From: Hyphochytrium catenoides
Lineage: Eukaryota > Protista > Hyphochytriomycota
DNA length: 64,000 nucleotides
NCBI GenBank assembly: GCA_900088475.1
Contig: FLMG01000154.1
Location: 62,001-126,000 of the forward strand
Reading direction: 5' to 3'
Shown here: one piece after another, positions 1 to 16,100 of the stretch
Layout of the letters: every line of letters begins with the position of its first letter
How positions within the stretch are numbered: position 1 is the first letter of the stretch
Program-made: the position numbers and the translations under genes
The notes under the pieces: generated by a model
The model's database searches: none
What the model was told of the DNA's origin: nothing
What the model saw: only the letters and a program-made list of their open reading frames with translations

Positions 1-3000
1 CCGTACGTCTTGACAGGCTATCTTGTCTCTGCTCCAACTCTTCACTTCTAATTTAAAACAAAAAGGTCGGCCGGCTGTCTCCGCTGGCACGGCCTCTACG
101 TTTGCGCCAGCCAGGTTTAGTATGGTACACTTTCCAAGCGTCTGCGACTGGTCTGCAAATAGAAGTGATCAGACATCCTTAGAAAATCAGACAAAGACCC
201 ACCTAACCTAAGCTTACTTTCGTTCTCATCGTGCTGGAAGATCAGTCTAGAGTTCTGCAGTACAGCCCAACGTTTCTTCCATAGCGGAGCCTTGCTGATG
301 GCAGAGAAAACAGAAGCTTGCTTCCGTACGGCCACCAAGCCCCCTTTCAGCCGCAACATTGGGGAGACTTTACTCTGATTAACGCCTTCAGTCTTCATGG
401 CCATGCTCATTCGGGTCTTAATGAAGAACTGCTGCCTCAGCTCTCTGTCTTGCCGCTCTCTACCAGTATGCAAAGAGTGGGTAAGGCCAACAGAAAAGAA
501 AGTTCGCAGGACTATAACTTACCGATACTCATCTATCCTCTTATTGAGTTTCTCTTGCTGAATAGACAGCATCTGGCAACGCAGAACGTCGTGCAAGAAG
601 CCGTGCGTGATCTCATACTTCACACGCCCTCCAAGCTGGTGTATAGATGCCGTGCTTCCGGCACACAACTCCACCTGTAAATTGAGGTGTGTCAGAAAGG
701 GAAGCATGACAAACGTCGCATTGCATGTCGTACCCTTTTGATGAAGTTTAACTTCAAAAGACCCTGAAACTCCTCATCTAATTTGGCGCCATGTGCACTG
801 ATGGGATACACTGTCTTCAAGAGTTCCAGTTCGAAGCTGGGGCCCAGAAGTGTGGCGGTCTAAATGGACCAGTCGGTGAGATGATGAACAGCTCTGGTTG
901 AGGTTCATAGGTGCTCACCTTCAGCAGCATACGCTGACAGACCGACAGCTCATCGACCCAAGCGGTAATTACCCCATTCACCACCACCGGCGGTTTTAGT
1001 CCGATGTTCTTAGTGGCTGATTTGCTCTTGTCTGTACTTGTCAGGCCTAGGAGCAGCAGCCTATCAGGCGTGTGGGCAAGTGTCACTTAGCTGTCAAGCT
1101 TGCACTCACCGCCGAGCAAAAGGGCTCCAAGGTGCTGCTGATGTTGGCCTTTCTCTCCACTAACTCTTCTTGGCCTTGTGTTGTTAAAGCAGTCCACACA
1201 GTGACGAACATACTCATTTTCTCCACTGACAAACAACAAAGAAGGGGAATTCAGGACATCCGTCGGAGGGAAAGAGTTTATACAGAAATGAAGAAACTAA
1301 CGGTAGCATCTTCTTGCAGGCATCAGGCGTACAACTTTCACAGAAGGTATAGCCACAGGCCCTGCACTTGTGCTTCTCATACGATCCTTGGAAAGAGAGA
1401 TGGCACTTGTAACAGCAAGCCGCTTCCGACTTGTCGCCCCAGGCTCTTTGCACCTTAAATGTACATTTCATGGTGCCTGCGGGAGAGGATGTTACAGAAC
1501 TGAATCTGAAATCTCTGGCAAACCCCATTATTTCATGTCGATAACGCCCCGAGCACCTACCGTTCTCCTTTTCCAAAACAATTAGGCCATCGTCCTTCAT
1601 CGAGCGCACCAGATATATCAGGAAAAGCGGATTGCCCTGAGACCTGACAAGACAATGCTTGAGAGATGGATAACCAAACACCAGAAAGCAAGTCCACGAT
1701 CAGTACCTCTGAATCAAGACAGAGGTAAGCTCCGCCGGCAACTCTTGCACTCCAAGCTCCTGACGAGCCAGGGCCTCCGCCCTCAATGGTGCTAACGGTT
1801 CAAGTACGGCCGTCTCAGACCGCGAGAAAGACCGGAACAAACTGAAAGAAATATCGATCAGAAATTCTACATTGGGCGGAACGTCGCATCATCAAACCTT
1901 AAAATTTCCCTTAGCTGTCCGGAGGCTCTGTCCGACACCTTTCGTGGCGGCCTCGTAGCTACGATGACCAAAATATTCTTCTCATCCTGGGCTGTACGAA
2001 GAGCCAGCTGCCATGACTTCTTGTCAATGAAAGAGGCATCATCGATGACGAGGATCAAGGGCCCTTCTTTGGCAAAACCTTGAAGAATGGTAAGGATAAG
2101 AAGGCCCGTAAGGTCGATCTTGATAGGTTCCATAGAGACCGGAGGAATGTCCTGCAAAGTGTACGAGGCCGCGCAGTAAAGAGTCATGAGGTGTGACCAT
2201 CAATCTAGTTCACCATTCCTTGGGCCTTCTAAAATAGCTCTCTAGTTCTTCCTCTGTTTCTCTCTTGTGTCCAGCGTTTCCCTGTCATTGATTAGCTATG
2301 TCGTGCTCTCTCTGTTGCCGCGTTATCACTCTTCCTCCTTCCGAGAGAAGCCATCAGGAAATACCTCTTCCGCCTGATTATTCTCTTCCTGGTGGTCTTC
2401 TTCATGTTGCCCTGGTTTCTCTTTTTCTCTGTGGACAAATGGAGTTCCAAGCTCCTCTTTCCGTTCGCTTGCATCAGCTTTCGCGAGTTCAGGCTTTTCA
2501 GGTTCTTCTTCACGTTTTTCACTTTGTGGCAAGTTTTCTGCTGCTACGGTTAGCTCGGGTTGTTCATTTTCCGCTTCTGGACAGGAGGCTAGAGTTTCAT
2601 CTCCTGATTCCATGCTCCTCAGTGCGTTGAGATTAGACGATGGTGTTGCTAAGCTATCTTCAGGGTCAGTTCCCTCAAAGACAAACTCTATTTCCTTCGT
2701 GCCTGCATTGCACAAAAATGATAAATAGGACGGGTAAGTAATGTTGTCACAGATGCCTGGAAGGCTCTGATGTCTTGGAAGCTCTAGATACGTGTGATGG
2801 CAAGGAGGAAGGCACGCACCAAGGACTCCTTTGATCTCATCCGGCACATCGGATCCAGCGGCCTCTGAACGCTTGAAATTCGTGCCCAGCAAATTGTTTA
2901 GACGGCTAGCATAAGGGAGAAGAAGGCTGCCAATCGAGGTTGACTGTGGAGAATGCAGAATGCGTCAGCGAGATAAACTCGGGTAGTTGCCGGAAATGCT

Positions 3001-6000
3001 GTTGGCCGAGACAGAAAAGTTGATGCAGCGAACAGGACCAAGGATGAAAGACGATGGGACTTCCTCAACTGACACCTACCTCTAGAATCTTCTGTATTTT
3101 GGACGTCTTCTCTTCCACTCCAGGACCTAATGATTGCATCTTCTCTGCCAACAGCTGCAACCAAACTCCGTATCTCCTGACGCCTGTCCCCTGCTCATAG
3201 GGATTGCCGCAACCCACCATGAAAGTGGCAAAGGCCAAGTCAGTGTTACAGAGGGCCGTGCAGAGGAGCCGGGTCTTCCCCAGCCCAATATCCCCTTCTA
3301 GTAGGAAGCCCCCGCCAATCCCTGCAGTTAGTCGTTGCAGAAGGGTGGATAATACAAGTCAGACGTGTGGCTAGATGCAGATAAGCGATCACCCTTGCAA
3401 CCTTTCTCTATGACAAGCCTGCACTTGTCTATTAGGCTCTGTCGGATTCGAGTAAGAGTGCGACCTTCCGTGGACACTGTGGCTGTGATGACTGGGAGCA
3501 GCCCCTCTTTCCTCAATAAAGCTTGTCGCTCTATCTCCTGGTTTACGGCTGCAGGAGAGGAAGACGAATCGGGAGTAGAAATGAGTATGTTCCCCCCATG
3601 CTTTAAATAGGTAAGCCGAGAAGAAGGGAAAGGACAAGCGGAGTAGACATAGTAGAATCCAATAGAGACTCATAAGGTTCAGGGAGGTCCAAGGATTTCT
3701 AGCAGGGATAAAAAGGGTAGCGGAGGTGTCACCAAGGTCTCTGACCATTTAGTTCGTCGACAGTCGCCACCGAGGTATTAGAAAGCGAGTGCTGAAGACA
3801 TATACGATGCTCAGCCGCTGCCTTGCACGCTTTTGCTATGGGTTCGGTTCTTCTCTCTTCTGCTGTGATAAGTTGGATCTCTAGAATATCGGCCATCGTG
3901 TTGACCACCTGCGACTGCACTGTTTGCTCCGAAGAGTCGGATAGAACAGAGGACGAAGAATCTTGTCTCCCGATAGATACAGAAGAGCTTTCTCTGAATA
4001 TCATAATGGTCCCGCCCAAAGATCTAACAGGAACACAGACATTTGCATAATGTTACGGTAGATCGCCAATATGCAGAAAGGCAGAAAAAGGAACCCCATA
4101 AACGGTGAGACGGATGGAGAGTAATCGAGCTGGAACAGATGAAGAAGGTACCTCTGAGTCTTTATTCCTCTTCCCAAGCCCTGTGATAGTAGTTGGGGAG
4201 AAGTTCTCTTTCTGTGCAAGTAGGTCTTTCCTCCAAGGTTAGCCGCCTCAAGACGATACTGCATAAGCGCAGACATCTTGGGATACGGACGATATATTAG
4301 AACTCTCTCCGTCTTGCCCTTGACTGTGATGTCGCTCATCTCCTCAAACTGCAGGGTATCAGCGACGGCAGTTCGTGTTGACAAGTCCGTCAAGATGCCG
4401 CCCTTCTGTTGTTTGGCGCGCTGTAGAAAAGGAGCAAGCATTATCGTCAATACCGAAGCCATCGCCCAAAGAGAGTCAAGGCGAGCACCGCCATTTTCAA
4501 GAGTAAAGGGGGTATCATGAGTACCGAAAGGGACGTAGCTTGCCGGCGAGGCGAGCTACATCTTAGGGGCTCACCTGCATTAGCCTGGCGGAGAGATTGA
4601 CAATATCTCCAAGAACTGTGTACTCTCTGCGGTTGCCATGGTGGCCCACCACACCGCAAAATGCAACTCCCGACGTAATGCCTGCCAACCGGTGACGCAA
4701 GTGAGCAAGGAATCATATGGACCGTAAAGGCAGCTAAAGAGGCAGCATTGATCGGAGAATCCCTTGCATTAAATGGTAAGGGGCGCGAGATATAGGGTAG
4801 GAGTCAGGTAACAGGTAGAGAGAAGAAAGGTTCGGCTGAGATAGCGTGCGCCCCGTACCTACTGACGCCGCGAGGCCTATCTGAAAGAGTTTTGAGCAGA
4901 GGCTCAGCGCTGCTAGTACTCCCCGAGTGGCGTCATTCTCGTGTGCAACCGGTGGAAGACCAAACACAGCGATAACAGTGCTAGGAGAGAAGAAATGGCA
5001 TAAAACTGTGATTAGACAAGGGGCTGACAGGCGCGCAGAAGAGAGAGACATTGAAAGTCCCTCTAAGACGGCCTAGTGCAGAAAAGGTCACGAAGACGTG
5101 GTTTCGTCAGTAAAATACCTGCCCTTATCATCCACTAGGAACTTATTGATTGTCCCTTCATAGTCGTAGACGGCGCGTTGGACAAGGGCAAACGCATTCT
5201 GCAGCTTCTGGAGACCTTTGTTGTCCAACATTCCTACAAGATCTTGCTCACTGCATGACAGCGACGGTGAACATAGGTGAGATTATGGAGGCGAAGAGCG
5301 AAGTGGATCGCAGGGCACTAGAAGCAAGGGAGACAAAACCGTGTTATATGACTCTCCCGCCCGGAGTCCCCAGCATCAGGGAAGAGAGCAGGATATGACT
5401 AACTAGAATGCTTGGGACTAGTGCTCTCTTCAAGTCAAGTGCAAGATATGAACAAAAACGAAACGGAAACGAGATTTTTCGTGAGGAAAAGCAGACGCAA
5501 AGAGGAGAAAGAGCACAGCCAAAGACAAAGACTAGAGGATGGGGCTAAATGACAGGGATGCACGTACGTGAAGCCCAGGTTGATGAACAGGCAAGTGATC
5601 TGCCTGAGCTCTGAGCCCCAACTCTCTTCATCGGCATCAAGGAAGGGAACCACAGCTCTGGGGACGTATTGCCACATCCGCGCTTGCAGCTTAAAGTCAT
5701 CCCGAACGTCTGAGGTCCGACGGGAGCAGCGCTTGAGCTGCTTGTCAACTCTCTTGACCTGACGCCGCAGAATCAGGGGAGAATGTGACACAAAATCAGA
5801 ACTTCCACTGGAGGACACAAGAGATTGAAGTGTGAAGCATAGATCCTCTCTTCTGTTCACTAAAGGACTGAGAGACGCATTGGAGCCAACAAAGGACAAG
5901 ACATATAGGTGTTGAGTCCTTCGAGTCCGACCTTACCCTGATGAAGTCTCCTGCACTCTGTATCTTCTCTCCTGTGAAGTACTCGGAGACCAACTCCCAA

Positions 6001-7404
6001 GCTTCAGGAGCACAGACGACTTCTCCAGACTTCGCATATCCTTCACCTTCAAATGCCTGCAGGACGGCAGGGCCCGTCGCAATGTATTCAACCCGCGGAA
6101 CATCCCCGTCTGAGACACCTCCCAGATCAGCAATAGTCGCACGGCCCACGCCAACACCCATTTTGACGCTGAGCCTGAGGGTGCAGCCAACACAACGGGA
6201 ACAAGATGTGAGGAAGTATGATAGGCAAATAGAGAGACCGACAACGGAAGGTTGGTCGGTGATGGGCCACAGGGCACAGCGAAGCTTATCAATTCACCAA
6301 GGCCCTGCAATGCCACTCTACAATGCCGCCCTGTAGGCCAATCCCTCATTGCCTCTATTCCAATGTCCTTGCAGATGCCTTTGTCTATGTCTCTTCCCCT
6401 GCTCTCGCACCATACATTCACGTCTCTTGCAGTACTTACACAACGCCTGGTGCCAGCTCGGCTTTATGAAGATGGTCCTGAATAGATAGCGCACATTGGA
6501 CAGCCCTACGGATGAGACTCTCATAGGTATCGTCTTGGTTCTCCGGCCAGAAGATGATCATAGCGTCGCCTGCAAACTTGAAGACATCGCCGCCTGCGGA
6601 GGAGATATGCCGCACCATCTGGGAGAAGTAGGAATTCAAATATTTGCCTAAATGGAGAGAAGATTGTCAAAGTCAAAGTCACAAAAGTTGGGAGTTAGTA
6701 TGGCGAACTATACGCCGGGTTAAGGCTCCCAGACCAATGTGTCGCAGTTTGAAGAGGATAATCCTGCAGTCAAGCCCAGAGGTAAGAGAAAACAGCTGAT
6801 ACTGAGAAGTCATGCGCAAGAGTAAGCGACAGATAAAACAGAGACAGGCATAGCCAAGGGTTAAAGCTATCGGTTCCGAGCCTCGGGCCTTGATAGATAC
6901 CTAAAAACTCAGCTCCAGTAGGGCCTCGAGCAGCTAAGGACTCCGACATGGCGGTGAAGCCGGAAACATCGGCGAAGACACAGACCTACATCGGAAGGAC
7001 GAGATTTAGCAGAGTGCTAGAGCCTGCTGAAAGCATAAGGCTCTAACTAAACTTATGAGACCGAACGAAAGACAGACCAAAAGAGGAGGAGGCCAAGAAG
7101 CAACTGAGGGAAGAGTATGAAAAGAGTCTCCAGAGATGAGACATCTTTTTCTCTTCAGCTCCTGCCTCTCTCGCTCTTCCATTTCGTCTTTCCAATAGAT
7201 CTGTGTGTCCCCTACAACCTTCCTGTCCCTGCATGTCCTCCAAAGGCACTGTCCAGGCCGACCTACCGTTTGAATCTCATGAGTGTCCGGAAGAGGAAGA
7301 GCTGGTCCTCCCTCTTCCTGTCTCCTTAGCGCCTTCTCTAAATGCCGCCGGACCAGGGAAGGCAGGTAGTCACTGATGCGGACGGAAGCGGTGAGTCCTC
7401 TCAT
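1..7404 (-). CDS. ADCY10: Soluble adenylyl cyclase (ADCY10/sAC-like): two class III cyclase domains, STAND NTPase, inserted FYVE zinc finger, C-terminal PH domain; multi-exon, 3' end runs off the window
   Basis: Spliced exons give the expected motifs. C1: VFADVSGFTAMSE (~6900-6985) and GGDVFKFAGDA (~6570-6600). C2: ELRQITCLFINL, YEGTINKFLVDDKG (~5120-5165), VFGLPPVAHEND, GITSGVAFCGVVG..REYTVLGDIVNLSARLM (~4575-4685). STAND: Walker A GDIGLGKT (~3270-3300), Walker B LVIDDA (~2040), GNPLF (~1630). FYVE cysteine pairs lie at ~1185-1445. PH: LWKKRWAVL..RPFCFKL (~1-350). GT-AG phases are consistent where checked; the start codon is uncertain (a short upstream exon from ATG 7518 is possible). Confidence 0.92.
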
Positions 7405-8096
7405 CTCTAGTGACGGGACAAAGAATAGAATCTACGGCCAAGAGACAGCGAAGAGAGAGGCCGACGGACGGAGAGTTCTACTTCTTTCGATCCGATCCTT
7501 AGTGGATGTAGACTCCATAAAAATAGCACAAGGAGGCCACAACGGTCCTGCTTGTCTTATCAGAAGCTATGTATTAGGTCTTCAAAAGACTAATCAACTG
7601 TGCGCGAGAGACTCTCCAGTTTCCCTATGAAGTTAAAGATAAGACCGACGGGAGAGGGACAGAAGTCGGAATGGAAGACTGAAGAAGCTGAATGCCGCAG
7701 TCTCTGCATCAGGCAAGCTCGCGACGTCCATCTTCTTCTGTGTCCCTCTCTTTTCTGTGTAACCCGTCCCGCTCTGGCTGTCTCAACCCTGCTGGAGCTT
7801 CACCGTCGAACTTGAAGCCTCGTCTAAGACCCTCTTCTTGTCTCTCAGTTGTTGCGGGCTTAGGACGCTTTTCTCCCCGTCGCTTTTCCTTCTCTTCTTT
7901 TGTCCTTCCAACTCTATGCTCTTTTAAGTGTGTGGATTCATCCAAAAACCTCTCCATCTCCCCTTGAAAACCTTCTCTCTTTCCTCCTTGATCTTTCCCA
8001 ATTCGCTGGTACTTCACTGGCTATTTTTCCCTCACACCTGCAGCTTGAGGCTGGACTGCCCTCAACTCTCCTGAAGGCTACTGCTGCGATTTCGCT

Positions 8097-8285
8097 CGTC
8101 TCTCTCACTCTCACTCTCTCTTTCTTTCTCTCTCTCTCTCCCTCTCTCTGCCTCTCTCTCTCTTTCCCCCTTACACACAGTGTCTCTCTCTCTCTTTCTT
8201 TCTCTCTCTCTCTCCCTCTCTCTCTCTCTTTCCCCTTACACACAGTGTCTCTCTCCCTCTCTGTCTCTCTTCACAGTCTCTTCCC
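8097..8285. repeat. Imperfect (CT)n microsatellite with a duplicated ttccccttacacacagtgtctctctc-like unit
   Basis: CT-rich run visible directly; the ccttacacacagtgtctctctc core occurs twice (~8169 and ~8234). Confidence 0.9.
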
Positions 8286-9160: not shown

Positions 9161-10310
9161 CTAATGTTGGCGACTTTCCGCGCCGCGGACAATACATTTT
9201 GGGAGACACGAGCAAAGAAAGGTGATAAGCCTCGCTAGACTCTTACCGCAATCCAAGCACACTGTCTCCGTCATTAACAGACAGCAGATGATGCCGAAGG
9301 GGAAGAAAAGAATGGCCAACAGCATGCCACAAAGAGTGAATGTACTCGTGGTGTGCAAGTGCGGGCAAGCGCGCGTCACAATGACAGTCTATAGCAGTAG
9401 AGGGGAAGAAGAGAGAACGGTCATATGATCCTCAGAATAAATTCTCCAAAACCCCCCCTAACAAGCGAGTTTGGCTTCTAAAAGACAACTATGAAGACGA
9501 ACAAGAATGGATAAGAAAAGAATCCCACGTCCCGAGAACAATGCCTTCCTTCCTTCGTTCATAATGTCCTCTGCTTTAGCTCTTTTGTGTACCTGCTGGG
9601 GCTGACCATAGACAACCTGAGGCTGATAGACTGGCTGCGCATACTGAGCTTGGCCTGGGTAAGGTGACGAACCATTTTGCGCTGGATAACCAACTGGTTG
9701 GGCCTGGTAGGGTGACTGCTGATTGTAAGCTTGGGGTGCAGGATATCCGCTAGCAGTAGGGACTGCGGAAGCCGCGTGGTATTGGGGAGGCGCTTGATAG
9801 GATGGACTGTGGCCCTTATCTCCCTCTGCTGGTCCGGCTCCAGGCTGCAGGTTGGTGCCGCAGTTTGCTGCCAGGAACATTGAAGCATAATTACACCAGG
9901 AGATAATAAGAAAATGGCATCAAAGACAAAGACAACGCGATTGCTATGAACTAGCCACGCACAAAGAGAGTGGCAGGTACTTTAGCAGACGACGAGGAGT
10001 CAGGCGAGATTTATTTGAATGGGGCGTTCGTAAGGTCAAGGTTAAAACTTACTGCAAAAGGAAACTCCTTCCACCTGGGTGGAACCGCAAGAATCTGTGC
10101 CAAAGACGCAATAGGCAGTTAGCACAGCATCAGGCAACCATGAGTCCGACAGCAGGTACAAGGTCTAGGACTTAAATTACGAAGACCCAGAGACGGATGG
10201 GAAGCATGAGAGAACGCGCAATCTAACAAGACGGCGGGCAGGAGCAGGAATGGAACTTGGAAGGAGATTAAGGAAGACAAAGGCGGGTATAACGTACGGC
10301 AGATTGGCAT
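9161..10310 (-). CDS. BRI3/DUF2367-like (LITAF-related) small membrane protein with N-terminal zinc ribbon and Pro/Gln/Tyr-rich linker; 4 exons
   Basis: Spliced N-terminus reads MPIC|HSCGSTQVEGVSFC|TNCGTNL (CxxC..CxxC ribbon). A PPQY/GYP/QPVY-rich exon follows (~9593-9866). The last exon is CPHLHTTSTFTLCGMLLAILFFPFGIICCLLMTETVCLDCG, matching the BRI3 pattern FTxxGxxLAIxFFPxGIxCC..CxxCG. The exact 3' end is uncertain (possible extra donor near 9247). Confidence 0.8.
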
Positions 10311-11021
10311 GATAAGTGCTTTCTGTGTCAATGAAGACCGTCAAACCTTCTTCTTCGTACTCTGTGTATGCTGACGTTCGACAACTGAGGCAATGAGCGA
10401 GCTCAAGAATGTATAAGTGAATTTTCCAATCTGCAGACCGCAGCACAGCTGCTTTCTGGAGCGTGATGAGAGAATAACAGACTGACAGAGACTCATCAAA
10501 CAGAAGACACGAAGACACTTTCAGAGTCTAACGCGGAGGCCAGAACTAGGGCGAAAATAGCATATCCATAGTGCAATAGTGTCAGCTCTATGCGTAAAAT
10601 ACCGAGACTAAGGAATGAGGCCGAGCGATGGCTGGTTTGTGAGGGGTTGGAAACCTGATAGTTTGTTTGGGGCTCAGAAACGCTCTATTTTCGTGACCTG
10701 AGGTTGTGGAATCCGAGCGGGATGGAAAGGACAGCTGGACACACAGGGCCAACAGAGTCTAAAGAAAGAGTGAACATAGATATCGTAAACCTGATAGCCA
10801 GAGCTCGATATGTTAAGTCTTTTAGAGGTACTAGAATTTAGACTAGGTAGGGGTGCCTTCTAGACAGAGTGCGGGCTAGACGTCATCCTTGACGATGCAC
10901 AAGGACAGACGATGCTGCGAAATCGTATGTCTCACCCCACTGATCGGCCCATCCATCCTAGAGAACAACCTTCAGAGTGAAAATGGGTGGGGACACAAGG
11001 GAGCGGCCAAAAACAAGGGAG

Positions 11022-11140
11022 AGTAGAGAGGGGGAGGGGAAAGAGAGAGAGAGAGAGAGAAAAAAAAAAGAGAGAGACAGAGAGACAGAGAGAGAAGAGA
11101 CAGAGGGACAGAGACAGAGACAGAGAGGGAGAGGGAGAGA

Positions 11141-11171
<31 letters not shown>

Positions 11172-11172
11172 A
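11022..11172. repeat. Imperfect (GA)n microsatellite
   Basis: Purine-rich GA/GACA run visible directly. Confidence 0.9.
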
Positions 11173-12503
11173 AGCAGAAGGACAGTGATTTGAGCTGCAG
11201 AACAGACCCTCATTGAGGTGGAGTGAGAGTGAACAACTGAAAGATGAGAAAGATGGAACCGAAGGAGGAAGATGATGACAATCGCCCCAATCATCTCTAA
11301 TTTTTTAAAAGTCACAAAGCTTCCAGTGGTCTTCATTGTGTTCCTGATCTTTGTTCGCCCTATTGATGCTGCTGCTTTGATGGGACCTCAGCGTACAGTT
11401 ATCGCGCGCTGCTGTCTAGGTCGGCTTGCAATCTGCTGCTTGGAGGAGGCTACTCATTATTGAGCATTACTCTATGTCTTTTGCGCTTCCCTTGCACTGC
11501 CAGATAACAAACCAATGAACCGCTGGAACACTCATCTCGATCTCCGGCTGCTACCTTCATTGCTCAGCCCTAGCAGCAGCTGTTTCCAAGAATTATCCTT
11601 AGGCTTCTCCCCCCTTTCCATCGTGGGGTAGTACAGATGATGGACCTCCTCTTTCTCCTACTTCTAGCCGATCTGTGACGCTAGCCGTCGTTATTTTAAA
11701 ATGACTTATATTAACGTCACATATACAAAGCAAGGAGGCCGATCTCTTATCAATCAACTCTTCTATAAAGAATCCGTCATCCGTTATCCCAAGCAAGCTA
11801 CGAAGGCGTTAAGGGATAGAATAACGCAGACGACGGTAAAAAAGGGAGCTCAAAGAGAGCAACCGCGAAGCTTGGCTCGTCGTGTTATCCTTTCTTACTA
11901 CTGATTAGCGCTATTTGCCATGATAAGAAAGGCCTACGACGTGGTGGGTGTCTACTACTAGCTATCACGCTACTACTTATTGCTTCCATCGTCGCCTACT
12001 GTTATCATAATAATAGCGGTTCTTGTTGCGGCTGTCTCAACTAGTGGTGAACGAGGCGGAACAGAGGAAGAGAAACAGTTGCAGACAGAGAGCGAAGGAG
12101 GAGGAGAGAGGAGAGGAGAAGAGAGAGAGTGAAGAAGAAGCTGTAAGATGGACAGCAGAAAGCAGGCGACCCCCGCACCTTCATCCACTCATCAAGAGCC
12201 CAACAGCGGGAGAGGTCATCAGATCAGCAGCCAAGCGTACTCACTATGTAACGCCTTGTCAATTATGGTATATTTGACACCAAATGATCCAATATAGCTG
12301 TGTCTGAGATGTAAATTACGGGAATTCACATAAGAAGGCCTTATGTCCCATATTAGTTTCGCCAAATCGTACAGTAATTTCGTTTTCTTGACATCAATCT
12401 TGGATGGGCTTGACAGTGGTGAACCGTTATTTTCACATCTGCTGGAACTTTTGGGAGGAGGACTCTTGAGGACCTTCCGCTCCCTTTCCTCTCTGCCCTG
12501 TAC

Positions 12504-12572
<69 letters not shown>

Positions 12573-12600
12573 GTCTCTCTCTCTCTCTCCCTCTTTCTCT
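12504..12600. repeat. (CT)n microsatellite
   Basis: Near-perfect CT run visible directly. Confidence 0.95.
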
Positions 12601-13164
12601 TGTTTTGTCTCTCTTCTCTCCCCTACCTTCTTCTTGCCTTTACTAATCTCTCTCTTTCTCCAGTTTGCTTTTAGCTTCTAACGGTCTTCATCTTCTCTTG
12701 GCTCTGATCATGTCTCTTCTGCCCTGTCTCCTCTCTCTTCCTACGCTCTCAATATGTACTTCCCAATCCTTTACAGCTTCTCTCGCCGTGTCATCTCCTT
12801 TTCTCTCTGTCTCTCGCCCATCATTGGCTTGTGGGGCCAGGATTCCATCTTCTCCTCATCCTTCCGGGCAACTTCTTATGAACGGGTTCGGGAACTGCTG
12901 TCAGCTTATGGCTGAGGAAAGCTCCACCTGGCCCTCGAGTGACCAAGAGACACGGTCGGGGAAGAGAGAAAGAGAGAATCCGAGCAGACGTACACTCAAA
13001 GAGAAGCTTATCAAGGAGACATCGTGAAAGAGAGTGAGAGAGAAAGAAGCAATACGAGCAGGAGGGAACGGGGAGAAAAAGATGGAAAGTCGTCGACGAC
13101 TAAACGCCTTCGCGGTTCAACTATCCGCTTGAGTGCACTTTCTCTTTCCTGTTGATTCCCCACG

Positions 13165-16100
13165 ATGGCATTAGACTCTGAAAAGACTGAAGAAGGAAGG
13201 GAAGGAGAGGCGGCGGATATAATGAAAACGGCCGTATCTACTTCCAAGACTGCTTCTCCCAGACAACCAGGGAAAGGGAAGACAGGGAGAACAGAGATGA
13301 ACTTCCTCTCTCCACGAACCTTCGATCTTCCAACGGAGAATAAGGAGAAGAAGAGCCGGAAGCTACGGCATCAGCTGATCCTGCAAGGTACCAGCATTCA
13401 TCGAACTCATAGGTCACCGCACCTCGCCGCCCTCTTCATGCCTTGGACCTCTCCCTCTTTCGCGACTTTCAAGAGCTCCTCCCTTTGCATCTTGGGCCTT
13501 GTCCTCCTGCCCTAGTCTCTCTCTATATCTTTCTTTCTCTCTCTCTCGTCGCGTTGCACCCTGCCAATCTACCTGTTTGATCCCAACATTACAGCCTCTC
13601 TGACTGACACGTTCATAGGCTTTGGGCTCTTCAGTCTGGTGGTCTGCTTTGTTCTGGAACTTTTCGTCTTTTCTTCTCTCTCGCTTCCTGGACTGGGCTC
13701 GGTCCTTCTATCCATCGTCTTCACTTTGTCCATCCTCCACGCGCATTGCGCCCTACAGCGCCCTGAGAAGAGCTCCAGCAGGCTCCTAGCTCTCCGAACG
13801 GTCTATGAAGCAGGTAGGGCTATGTCTAGACCGGAGAGGATAGCTATGAAGAACAGGGAAAAAGAGCGAATGATGGGATCAAGAGAGACAGTAGAGTGAC
13901 AGTGACAGAGGCAAACCAGCCGCACCGGGATCAATTGAAAAGCCTCTTTTTGAGAGAAGGAGAGGGAGCGAGGGACACTCACAGACAGACGGCAAAAGAC
14001 ACAGGAAAGAAAGAAAAAGAGAGACTAAAGACGATTTGCTTGTATATCTGTGCTAACACTTGCTCCTTTCTCTTTCCCTCTTTCCTTTCGTCTTCCTTAG
14101 TGTTCGCGCTCTCAGCCTTCCTTGGTGCTGTGCTAGGTGGACACGCCCCTTCTCCAACTCCCTCCTGCGTCTTTCTCTCTCTTCTCTCCTACTTTCTCTT
14201 GACCAGTGCCGAGACGGTCAGTCTCTTGCATGGCTATCGCTTTTTGGGGATTATCATCAATCCTTTCTCTCACACCTTCTTCGCCGGTGTGAAGTCGGTG
14301 GGCTTGCTTCTCTGTCTGCCTCTGGGCGCCACTTTTCTCAACGTTGTGATCATGGCAGCAACCCACGGTCTGTCGCCTCCTTCTTTGCTCTTTCTCACCT
14401 CGATCTCGCTCCCTGTCTCGCTTTCTCTCTCATCCTTCTTTTATCTCTCTCTCTCTCTCTCTCTTCTCTCTCATTCCTCTATGATGCTCTCCTTCTCGTG
14501 TCTTCTCCCTTTTCATGTCCTTCTCTTGCCCTAGCTAGCCAAGGCCCAATATGAGCAAATCCTGCAACCTGAGCACCCTGTTCCTGATAGACCTGATAAC
14601 CATCAAAGAGAGAGGAAGCTCTGGTGTCGCTCTTTTCTAACCTCCCTCTGTCCCCTTGGTCTACCGTCGTGCAGGGCAACAGATGACGGAACAGATGTGC
14701 CGCGTTATCTCTCGTAGCGCCACTGAGAGTGTAGACGCAGAGAGCTGGGAGTTGAAGATTATTCTTCTCTATTGGCTTCCCCTTCTACTGTTGATAGGCT
14801 GTGAGCTCGTTATACTGAGCGGCGTATGCTTTGTCTTCGTAGAGGAGAGAAAGAGTAGACTCCCCCGGACTTTTTCCCTGATCAGGCAACGATTGATAGA
14901 GAATCTTGTCATGACAGGCGCCAGTTGCTTTCTATGGCTTGGCATTATGGTCACAGCCACCGTTGATTTGTCACCAGTGGCGAAGGAGAAGGCGGTGGTG
15001 AGGAACGGAGAGAAAGAGAGACTCTTCTGGTTCCTCTTGACGAGTGGGAGGAGCTACGTAACGTTCTTTAGTTTTTTCTTAGCGAATGGGAGTCCAGACT
15101 TTAGACTGAAGGGGAAACCACGGCCAGAGAACGTGGAAGAGCCTGAGCAGGAAGATCAACCAGAGGTGCGCCGCAAGACTGTCTTTCCACCTCTCTATCT
15201 TATCTATGTGTACACTGTCTCGATTTCTACCCCCTGCTGTGCCCCTAAAGACCTTTTACCTCCATCATTTTGGGCCCTGCGCCAGAGTCAAGACACGTAC
15301 TGTTCAGAGCGAGTGCGCTTGGCGCGAACTCTCTCCCTGTCCCTCCTCTTCCACCCATTTCCCCCATCTCCTTCCTTCTGCGTCTCTCTCTCTCTCCCTC
15401 TCTCTCTCTCGCGGTCTCTCTCTCTCTCTCTCTCNNNNNNNNNNNNNNNNNNNNNNNNNNNNNNNGTCTCTCTCTCTCTCTCTCTCTCTCTCTCCCACCC
15501 ACACAAATACAAGCCTTCTTCCTTCACTTTGTCAATCTATATCTTTTTCGTTTTCCGCTCCATGCTTCAATAATCTTCTTCTGATTTCCTTCGTCTTGTG
15601 TGCCTTGCCTTCTAAACAGACCAAGAAGCTCCTGCGTTACGAGATTCTGTTCTACACCCTCCAAGGAGTGAGAAAGTCTGTTAGGGAGTCAGCCAAGTTA
15701 GACTCTTCCGTACGAGTCCACAGGTTCTCTCTCCATCCACCTTCTCTCTCAGAGAGAGAAGAGGAACTTACACCTCCTGCCAAACGAACGGACGGAAGAG
15801 GGAGGAAGAGCGCTGAGGGTCTACCAAAAACTTCCCATCTACATTCCTCCGAATGGGAAGAGAGGCGGGCGAGCTCAATTAAGAGCTTCGCAGAGATCTC
15901 TGGGAATGTCATCCTGTCCAGGTCACAACTGGAAAAGCCTTCTCGAACCTCCAAACACGCCAGAGGGACCAAGGAAGGCGGTGCGGAGGGAGAGGAGACA
16001 AGCGAGGAATACGACCATTCCTTCCATACCTTTCTTGACTTCTCTCCTTACTATTTTCGCCAAATCCGTCTCTCCTCTTTGCTATCGGACGAAGATTACT

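What the first reader, a model, noticed from the sequence alone, without database searches (positions are those of the whole stretch)
1185..1445. FYVE zinc finger inserted inside the STAND module of a soluble adenylyl cyclase
Spliced exons read GNPLF..KENG|TMKCTFKVQRAWGDKSEAACCYKCHLSF..EKHKCRACGYTFCESC..LP|GENEYVRHCVDCF and then resume the STAND helical region (VNGVITAWVDELSVCQRMLLK|TATLLGPSF). All four CxxC pairs are present and the splice phases agree. Mammalian ADCY10 has no FYVE domain. The PI3P signatures are altered (WGDK for WxxD, EKHKCR for R[RK]HHCR, RHC for RVC), so the ligand may differ from PI3P.
Basis: partly seen in the sequence, partly recalled or inferred. Interest (0 to 1): 0.78.

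Follow-up and report, generated by a model that had tools for sequence, protein, structure and literature searches.

The report
FYVE finger inside soluble-type adenylyl cyclase
A protist gene for a soluble-type cAMP-making enzyme really does carry a lipid-binding-type (FYVE) zinc finger in its regulatory part, but water moulds (oomycetes) have the same layout and databases already list it, so this is a new member of an unstudied family, not a one-off.

Summary
On the minus strand I built a 24-exon, all GT-AG model that reads stop-free for 1394 aa. It encodes an ADCY10-like tandem cyclase and a P-loop STAND NTPase. A FYVE-type zinc finger follows, on exons 1476-1302 and 1225-1110. Then come a winged-helix domain and a C-terminal PH domain that runs off the window start.

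FYVE exon A alone passes Pfam's FYVE threshold (35 bits against 27.8). All four CxxC pairs are present.

Relatives without a finger align continuously across the site. A predicted ortholog structure matches CED-4 on both sides of the finger. So the finger is a true insertion at the helical-domain/winged-helix junction.

It is not unique. The cyclase + AAA_16 + FYVE + PH layout occurs in all major oomycete groups sampled, among them Achlya, Saprolegnia, Aphanomyces, Pythium, Phytophthora, Plasmopara and Albugo. It has the same insertion site and the same non-canonical signature. One database entry is even named for these domains. The window protein branches as sister to all of them.

I found no paper describing the layout. 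No RNA run was listed, so the splice junctions rest on homology. Function is inferred: phosphoinositide-linked placement or gating of cAMP synthesis.

The parts
1..7404 (-). Visible part of the gene: 24 exons, 1394 aa from the start codon at 7404. The C-terminus runs off the window start.
   Evidence: Hand-built GT-AG model, stop-free over 4182 nt. Every junction aligns gap-free with oomycete orthologs.
5937..6985 (-). Cyclase catalytic domain C1 (exons 2-4), with the metal-binding Asp in FADVSGFT (6976-6953) and in KFAGDAM (6579-6559).
   Evidence: Exon 3 hits only ADCY10 in the PDB, E 3e-5. Ortholog alignment to ADCY10.
4152..5758 (-). Cyclase catalytic domain C2 (exons 5-9), with VDDKGST, EYTVLGD and VNLSARLM.
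   Evidence: Alignment with the Achlya ortholog and human ADCY10.
3272..3295 (-). Walker A / P-loop, GDIGLGKT.
   Evidence: Sequence. Weak AAA_16 hit on this exon.
2365..2700 (-). Acidic low-complexity insert (about aa 762-873) between Walker A and Walker B.
   Evidence: Translation of exon 14. No family hit.
2035..2058 (-). Walker B, LILVIDDA.
   Evidence: Sequence. AAA_16 / nSTAND weak hits on exon 15. 56 STAND-cyclase relatives found with this exon.
1622..1636 (-). GNPLF motif at the end of the STAND helical domain, just upstream of the finger.
   Evidence: Invariant in 24 orthologs. Aligns with GNPFF/GHPFF of finger-less relatives.
1302..1476 (-). FYVE exon A: WGDK, the first three CxxC pairs, and EKHKCR.
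   Evidence: Pfam FYVE 35 bits, E 1.5e-8, cut-off 27.8. PDB FYVE hits.
1226..1301 (-). Intron 18 (76 nt, GTTAGT...CAG, phase 2), which splits the finger.
   Evidence: Reading through gives a stop. The spliced join matches orthologs (KLPG..VRHC) without a gap.
1110..1225 (-). FYVE exon B: VRHCVDC (fourth CxxC, 1209-1189), then a basic/Gln-rich linker.
   Evidence: The equivalent linker is disordered in the ortholog model.
523..1046 (-). Winged-helix domain of the STAND module (exons 20-22), resuming after the finger.
   Evidence: Aligns with finger-less relatives. The ortholog model has pLDDT about 90 here and matches CED-4, Apaf-1 and MalT winged-helix domains.
1..459 (-). Linker and PH domain (exons 23-24), truncated by the window start.
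   Evidence: Weak PH hit on the window exon, 18 bits. Orthologs pass Pfam PH at 33 and 27.5 bits. BLAST q1298-1394 matches the Peronospora PH region.

Best explanation
This is the ortholog, in an oomycete-related stramenopile, of a conserved oomycete protein. That protein has an ADCY10-like tandem class III cyclase, a P-loop STAND NTPase, a FYVE-type zinc finger at the helical-domain/winged-helix junction, and a C-terminal PH domain where sAC and bacterial relatives carry TPR repeats.

Shown here: the gene structure, the finger, its insertion site, its conservation, and intact catalytic and Walker motifs.

Inferred: the enzyme makes cAMP. Its two lipid-binding-type modules (finger plus PH) place or switch the cyclase on phosphoinositide-bearing membranes. 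The finger sits at the hinge that moves when STAND proteins switch. Headgroup binding there could therefore couple membrane contact to the NTPase switch and so to cyclase output.

The pocket stays basic (K, H, K/R, R/K, RH). It lacks the canonical WxxD, R(R/K)HHCR and hydrophobic turret loop. Classic PI3P-with-membrane-insertion binding is therefore doubtful, and the ligand may be another anionic lipid.
For: Gene model: 24 exons, GT-AG, stop-free. Junctions are gap-free against orthologs.

FYVE: Pfam 35 bits on exon A alone. PDB FYVE hits. Orthologs score 27.3 bits (Peronospora, just under the 27.8 cut-off) and 30.3 bits (Achlya, above it).

Insertion: finger-less relatives align on both sides. 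CED-4 Z 12.9 spans model residues 3..308.

Conservation: 41 hits with the same layout across oomycete orders. All 8 zinc Cys are invariant in 24 sequences. In Achlya the first half of the finger lies in the same exon as GNPLF.

Placement: the window protein is sister to all oomycete orthologs, SH-aLRT 100.

Cyclase: ADCY10 is the best solved relative. The metal Asp, the Lys and Thr at the sites I recall as adenine-specifying in ADCY10, and the Asn/Arg are kept. The PH domain passes Pfam in orthologs.
Against: There are no expression data; no RNA run was listed. No lipid-binding or enzyme assay exists for any member in the papers searched.

The canonical PI3P motifs are not met. The turret loop is polar (QGSYE) and carries a 20-35 residue K/D/E-rich insert in Peronosporales. 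That argues against classic membrane insertion.

Fold-level support for the finger is weak. The finger-only model has pLDDT 62, and its top Foldseek hits are FYVE domains but only at E 0.03-0.2.

The human bicarbonate Arg176 aligns with Phe, so sAC-style bicarbonate control may not apply.
Confidence: 0.6

Rival explanations
1. The finger is a FYVE-fold zinc module that no longer binds lipid. It serves as a protein-interaction or intramolecular latch element, as in the FYVE-related domains of Rab effectors or CARP2. Membrane targeting, if any, is left to the PH domain.
For: WxxD, R(R/K)HHCR and RVC are all altered in every ortholog. The turret loop is polar and tolerates long charged inserts. 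Two extra Cys and one His are invariant (C69, C118, H133 numbering), which hints at a family-specific feature. Rabphilin (1zbd) and CARP2 (1y02) appear among the weak fold matches.
Against: A cluster of basic residues at the canonical pocket positions is conserved (K, R/K, K/R, RH). The closest sequence matches are true PI3P-binding FYVE domains. Pairing with a PH domain suggests a lipid theme.
Confidence: 0.3
2. The finger is a facultative cassette. Exons 18 and 19 together are 291 nt and lie between two phase-1 introns. Skipping them keeps the frame and would give a finger-less isoform.
For: Exon lengths and phases from the model.
Against: No RNA data either way. In Achlya the N-terminal half of the finger shares an exon with the STAND helical domain and cannot be skipped alone. 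The finger is present in all full-length orthologs. The apparent finger-less entries are partly deleted gene models.
Confidence: 0.08
3. Gene-model artefact: the finger exons belong to a separate small gene or are chance ORFs inside a long intron of the cyclase gene.
For: Nothing beyond the lack of RNA evidence.
Against: The alignment is collinear with oomycete orthologs at 38.6% identity over residues 8-1282 in a single HSP. The finger sits in the same ORF as its STAND flanks in Achlya. Skipping only one of the two exons breaks the frame.
Confidence: 0.02

Closest known systems
Oomycete 'adenylate cyclase' orthogroup. Examples: Achlya hypogyna OQR95212.1; Peronospora effusa RMX70051.1; a Plasmopara entry named 'putative FYVE zinc finger, adenylyl cyclase class-3/4/guanylyl cyclase, pleckstrin'; Phytophthora citrophthora 'Adenylate cyclase type 10'.
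   Same: Same domain order (cyclase x2, AAA_16, FYVE, PH). Same insertion site after the GNPLF helix and hairpin. Same non-canonical finger signature (W[GA][DE]K, KxxC[KR]xCG, CTPxAC, VRHC). Identity is 58-61% in the cyclase part and about 35% around the finger.
   Different: The window protein branches outside all of them. Its gene has 23 introns against about 7 in Achlya. Its post-finger linker is much shorter. It keeps Arg at the last position of the basic motif, where oomycetes have Lys.
Human soluble adenylyl cyclase ADCY10 (PDB 4clf, 4oya)
   Same: Tandem C1-C2 in one chain. It is the best and nearly only solved relative. The metal Asp, Lys95 equivalent, Lys334 and Thr405 equivalents, and Asn/Arg are kept. 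A P-loop NTPase-like region follows the catalytic core (my knowledge for ADCY10).
   Different: No FYVE or PH in ADCY10 (my knowledge, not tested here). The bicarbonate-binding Arg176 aligns with Phe in this family. ADCY10's C-terminal TPR-like region is replaced by a PH domain.
Cyclase-AAA_16-TPR proteins of about 1360 aa (P0051, P0011, P0045, P0031; sources unnamed, likely bacterial)
   Same: Cyclase, then AAA_16 STAND with the GNPFF motif and a winged-helix domain. They align on both sides of the finger site.
   Different: No finger. Only a few residues link the hairpin to the winged-helix domain, and TPR repeats follow instead of PH.
Canonical PI3P-binding FYVE domains (EEA1 1joc, Hrs 1dvp, Vps27 1vfy, RUFY1 2yw8, endofin 3t7l)
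   Same: Eight Cys in four CxxC pairs with canonical spacing. The CG after the basic motif and the R-x-C before the last pair are kept. Sequence hits run from E 7e-6 to 4e-3, and these domains are the top fold hits.
   Different: WxxD becomes WGDK, R(R/K)HHCR becomes EKHKCR, and RVC becomes RHC. The turret loop is polar. Two extra Cys are invariant.

Membership tests
FYVE zinc finger (Pfam PF01363) | Score above Pfam's gathering threshold | tested here: met
   Exon A alone scores 35 bits against a 27.8 cut-off, E 1.5e-8. The Achlya ortholog scores 30.3 bits and Peronospora 27.3 bits.
FYVE zinc finger (Pfam PF01363) | Eight zinc-binding Cys in four CxxC pairs | tested here: met
   C1052/1055, C1068/1071, C1076/1079 and C1098/1101. 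All are invariant in 24 orthologs.
Canonical PI3P-binding FYVE | WxxD motif | tested here: not met
   WGDK in the window and W[GAD][DE]K in orthologs. The acidic residue is shifted by one and Lys sits at the D position.
Canonical PI3P-binding FYVE | R(R/K)HHCR motif | tested here: not met
   EKHKCR in the window. Orthologs have xK[H/Q/C/F/N/T][R/K]C[K/R].
Canonical PI3P-binding FYVE | RVC motif | tested here: inconclusive
   RHC: the Arg and Cys are kept, and His replaces Val in all 24 orthologs aligned in A1.
Canonical PI3P-binding FYVE | Hydrophobic membrane-insertion (turret) loop before the basic motif | tested here: not met
   QGSYE in the window. A long K/D/E-rich insert sits there in Peronosporales. 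The role of this loop is from my knowledge of FYVE structures.
Canonical PI3P-binding FYVE | Binds PI3P | not testable with these tools
   Needs lipid-binding assays.
sAC-type (ADCY10-like) class III cyclase | Tandem C1-C2 in one polypeptide, closest to ADCY10 | tested here: met
   Window exon 3 hits only ADCY10. The ortholog's residues 1-470 hit ADCY10 at E 6e-45 in two stretches. The window is 58-61% identical to those orthologs.
sAC-type (ADCY10-like) class III cyclase | Catalytic residues (two metal Asp; Lys and Thr for adenine; Asn and Arg) | tested here: met
   FADVSGFT, KFAGDAM, VDDKGST, EYTVLGD and VNLSARLM align with the human residues. Residue roles are from my knowledge of ADCY10 structures.
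sAC-type (ADCY10-like) class III cyclase | Bicarbonate site (Lys95 and Arg176 of human sAC) | tested here: not met
   The Lys95 equivalent is kept. Arg176 aligns with Phe (LQAFEGE) via the Achlya-ADCY10 alignment. Window exon 4 alone gave no PDB hit, so this rests on a two-step alignment.
STAND NTPase (AAA_16 type) | Walker A and Walker B | tested here: met
   GDIGLGKT and LILVIDDA. AAA_16 hits on the window exons are only weak, at 17.6-18.1 bits. The Achlya ortholog scores 31.6 bits, just under the cut-off.
STAND NTPase (AAA_16 type) | Helical domain plus winged-helix domain after the NTPase | tested here: met
   For the ortholog model: CED-4 Z 12.9 (rmsd 2.9, 173 aligned, residues 3..308), RPP1 Z 12.2, STAND-TPR 6mfv Z 10.8, MalT Z 10.3. 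This was tested on the Achlya ortholog, not on the window protein itself.
STAND NTPase (AAA_16 type) | C-terminal repeat sensor (TPR/WD40/LRR) | tested here: not met
   A PH domain follows instead. The gene probably ends soon after, because the next gene lies 366 nt beyond the window start.
Oomycete cyclase-AAA_16-FYVE-PH orthogroup | Collinear domain order and identical insertion site | tested here: met
   A single HSP covers residues 8-1282 against Peronospora. In the tree the window protein is sister to the group.

The most novel reading that the evidence does not exclude
The finger and PH domain together replace the TPR sensor of sAC-like STAND proteins. That would make this a phosphoinositide-gated STAND switch. 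Lipid headgroup binding at the helical-domain/winged-helix hinge would open the NTPase and turn on cAMP synthesis at a specific organelle membrane. This would be a direct lipid-to-cAMP coupling not described for any cyclase, and one that predates the oomycete radiation.
Probability: 0.2. Interest if true: 0.7.

Novelty: new member of a known kind. Interest (0 to 1): 0.4.

Why it matters
Oomycetes include major crop and fish pathogens. Their PI3P biology and their huge FYVE family (272 proteins in P. sojae, PMC8233823) are actively studied, while their cAMP sources are poorly known. A conserved soluble-type cyclase with two lipid-binding-type modules built into its regulatory switch is a concrete candidate link between phosphoinositide and cAMP signalling. 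The window gene shows that the layout is older than the sampled oomycetes. It also gives an outgroup that sharpens which finger residues are truly constrained. For sAC research, this family is a natural experiment: the TPR sensor is swapped for a PH domain and a zinc finger sits at the STAND hinge.

Tried and rejected

2. The spliced 1394-aa protein has no reference. I did not type it into Pfam, PDB, structure or database tools. Exons were searched singly by reference, and orthologs from the databases stood in for folding. The window protein itself was therefore not folded.

3. The exhaustive representative search with exon 15 found no near-identical protein, so this genome's own protein is not in that library.

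4. Window exon 4 alone gave no PDB hit. The Arg176-to-Phe call rests on a two-step alignment.

5. Foldseek gave no match at E <= 0.001, either on the 316-residue ortholog model or on the finger-only model. The finger-only model is low confidence (pLDDT 62). I count these fold results only as consistent.

6. Apparent finger-less oomycete entries (P0100, P0102, P0097) are gene models with part of the finger deleted, not true paralogs.

7. Six literature searches found no paper describing a cyclase-FYVE protein. A third cyclase in a Phytophthora zoospore membrane proteome (PPTG_08439, PMC12223298) could not be mapped to this family.

8. The careful tree search did not finish, so the quick IQ-TREE result is reported. 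The window row has a long branch (1.42).

Full report
**Observation.** The finding lies on the minus strand.

From GT-AG sites and reading frames I built a 24-exon model that starts at the ATG at 7404 and runs off the window at position 1. It is 4182 nt and 1394 aa with no stop. All 23 introns are GT...AG and measure 56-317 nt.

The finger is encoded by exon 18 (1476-1302) and exon 19 (1225-1110), split by a 76-nt phase-2 intron. Reading through that intron hits a stop. The four CxxC pairs are at aa 1052/1055, 1068/1071, 1076/1079 and 1098/1101.

Exon 18 alone scores 35 bits (E 1.5e-8) on Pfam FYVE, against a cut-off of 27.8. It also matches solved FYVE domains of RUFY1, endofin, EEA1, Hrs and Vps27.

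**What the gene is.**
- The N-terminal 460 residues are a tandem class III cyclase. Exon 3 alone hits only human ADCY10 among all solved structures.
- The Achlya ortholog, 58.6% identical to the window protein in this part, hits ADCY10 at E 6e-45 in two stretches, C1 and C2.
- Through that alignment and a MAFFT alignment, several residues are kept: both metal Asp (FADVSGFT, KFAGDAM), the Lys and Thr that I know as adenine-specifying in ADCY10 (VDDKGST, EYTVLGD), and the Asn/Arg of VNLSARLM.
- Human Arg176, the bicarbonate arginine by my knowledge, aligns with Phe.
- Downstream come a Walker A (GDIGLGKT), a 110-residue acidic insert, a Walker B (LILVIDDA) and the GNPLF motif. AAA_16 hits on the window exons are weak.
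- After the finger, the sequence resumes with a winged-helix region and ends in a PH domain. The PH hit on the window exon is weak, but orthologs pass Pfam at 33 and 27.5 bits.

**Is it an insertion in the STAND module?** An exhaustive HMMER search with exon 15 returned 56 cyclase-STAND relatives. BLAST of my model against them shows that the common 1360-aa cyclase-AAA_16-TPR proteins match aa ~883-1030 and then aa ~1147-1265. They have only about 15-20 residues where the window protein has about 116.

The MAFFT alignment puts the finger plus linker exactly between the hairpin that follows the GNPLF helix and the first helix of the winged-helix domain.

An AlphaFold model of the Achlya region (pLDDT 74.5; flanks about 90, finger 75-80, linker disordered) aligns with several STAND proteins:
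- CED-4: Z 12.9, rmsd 2.9, 173 residues, model range 3..308, which lies on both sides of the finger.
- Plant NLR RPP1: Z 12.2.
- A STAND-TPR protein (6mfv): Z 10.8.
- MalT: Z 10.3.

More precisely, the finger sits at the helical-domain/winged-helix junction.

**It is not unique.** Two of the hits, Peronospora effusa (1560 aa) and Achlya hypogyna (1224 aa), carry the same finger at the same place. They scan as Guanylate_cyc + AAA_16 + FYVE + PH.

A word-index search with the Achlya finger region found 41 proteins. All the named ones are oomycetes: Saprolegnia, Thraustotheca, Aphanomyces, Pythium, Phytophthora, Nothophytophthora, Plasmopara, Hyaloperonospora, Peronosclerospora and Albugo. Most have these four Pfam families precomputed. 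One is named 'putative FYVE zinc finger, adenylyl cyclase class-3/4/guanylyl cyclase, pleckstrin'. Another is named 'Adenylate cyclase type 10'. Entries that seem to lack the finger are gene models with part of it deleted.

In Achlya the first half of the finger lies in the same exon as the GNPLF region. The fusion therefore does not depend on any splice prediction.

A quick maximum-likelihood tree places the window protein as sister to all oomycete orthologs, with SH-aLRT 100 on both relevant branches. The window branch is long and the careful search did not finish. This fits earlier notes that the genome is an oomycete-related protist. It implies that the layout predates the sampled oomycete radiation.

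**The finger's character.** Across 24 orthologs all eight zinc Cys are invariant. So are W, K (of WG[DE]K), CG, F, TP, two further Cys and the His of VRHC.

The canonical PI3P signatures are absent throughout:
- WxxD is W[GAD][DE]K.
- R(R/K)HHCR is xK[H/Q/C..][R/K]C[K/R].
- RVC is RHC.

The position of the canonical membrane-insertion loop is polar (QGSYE here). In Peronosporales it holds a 20-35 residue K/D/E-rich insert.

The pocket thus stays basic and constrained but is not the classic one. A finger-only model is of low confidence (pLDDT 62). Its top fold hits are EEA1, RUFY1, Hrs and endofin, but at non-significant E-values. The FYVE assignment therefore rests mainly on sequence.

**Mechanism.** My best reading is inference beyond the anatomy. 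I take this to be an adenylyl cyclase whose STAND switch has traded its TPR sensor for two lipid-binding-type modules. Phosphoinositide-bearing membranes would then position, and possibly gate, cAMP synthesis.

The main rival is that the finger has become a protein-binding or latch module, and only the PH domain binds lipid.

A minor possibility is that exons 18+19 are sometimes skipped. They total 291 nt and both flanking introns are phase 1, so skipping would keep the frame. There is no evidence for skipping. A gene-model artefact is effectively excluded.

**Literature and novelty.** Six full-text searches found no paper describing a cyclase-FYVE protein. Papers on oomycete FYVE proteins report a very large family with many lineage-specific partner domains. 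Their main text does not mention cyclases (PMC8233823; bioRxiv 10.1101/2021.12.02.470886).

The family is therefore visible in databases but apparently unstudied. The window gene is a new, deep-branching member. I did not test that note.

**Limits.**
- No RNA run was listed, so expression and junction use are untested.
- The spliced window protein could not be submitted to the search and folding tools because it has no reference. Orthologs stood in for it.

Noticed in passing
window 9164-9388 (-), with a Pro/Gln/Tyr-rich ORF at 9461-9919 (-): The upstream neighbour on the same strand looks like a BRI3 (brain protein I3) family gene: Pfam PF10164, 44 bits on the C-terminal exon. A P/Q/Y-rich segment precedes it.
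   Followed up: partly
window 2365-2700 (-): A 110-residue acidic, low-complexity insert lies between the Walker A and Walker B motifs of the STAND NTPase. No family hit. Its effect on the NTPase fold is unknown.
   Followed up: no
finger region, aa 1035, 1084 and 1097 of the model (window about 1465-1463, 1318-1316, 1203-1201): Two Cys outside the eight zinc ligands, and the His of VRHC, are invariant in all 24 orthologs aligned in A1; the window has the same residues. They may form a third metal site or another family-specific feature.
   Followed up: no
window 1110-1476 (-): Exons 18+19 total 291 nt and are flanked by phase-1 introns, so the finger module is symmetric and could be skipped in frame. 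Achlya has a 42-nt intron 2-3 codons from the window's finger-splitting intron.
   Followed up: partly
window about 15300-15540: A run of N (an assembly gap) sits inside GA/GAGA-type simple repeats. Similar (GA)n-rich, ER/RE-coding low-complexity stretches recur at about 7900-8270, 10950-11390 and 12220-12680.
   Followed up: no
L001 (Achlya hypogyna JNBR01000332.1) 9389-9966: In Achlya the gene downstream of the ortholog encodes a GAF-domain protein. This may be another cyclic-nucleotide-related neighbour. Not examined.
   Followed up: no
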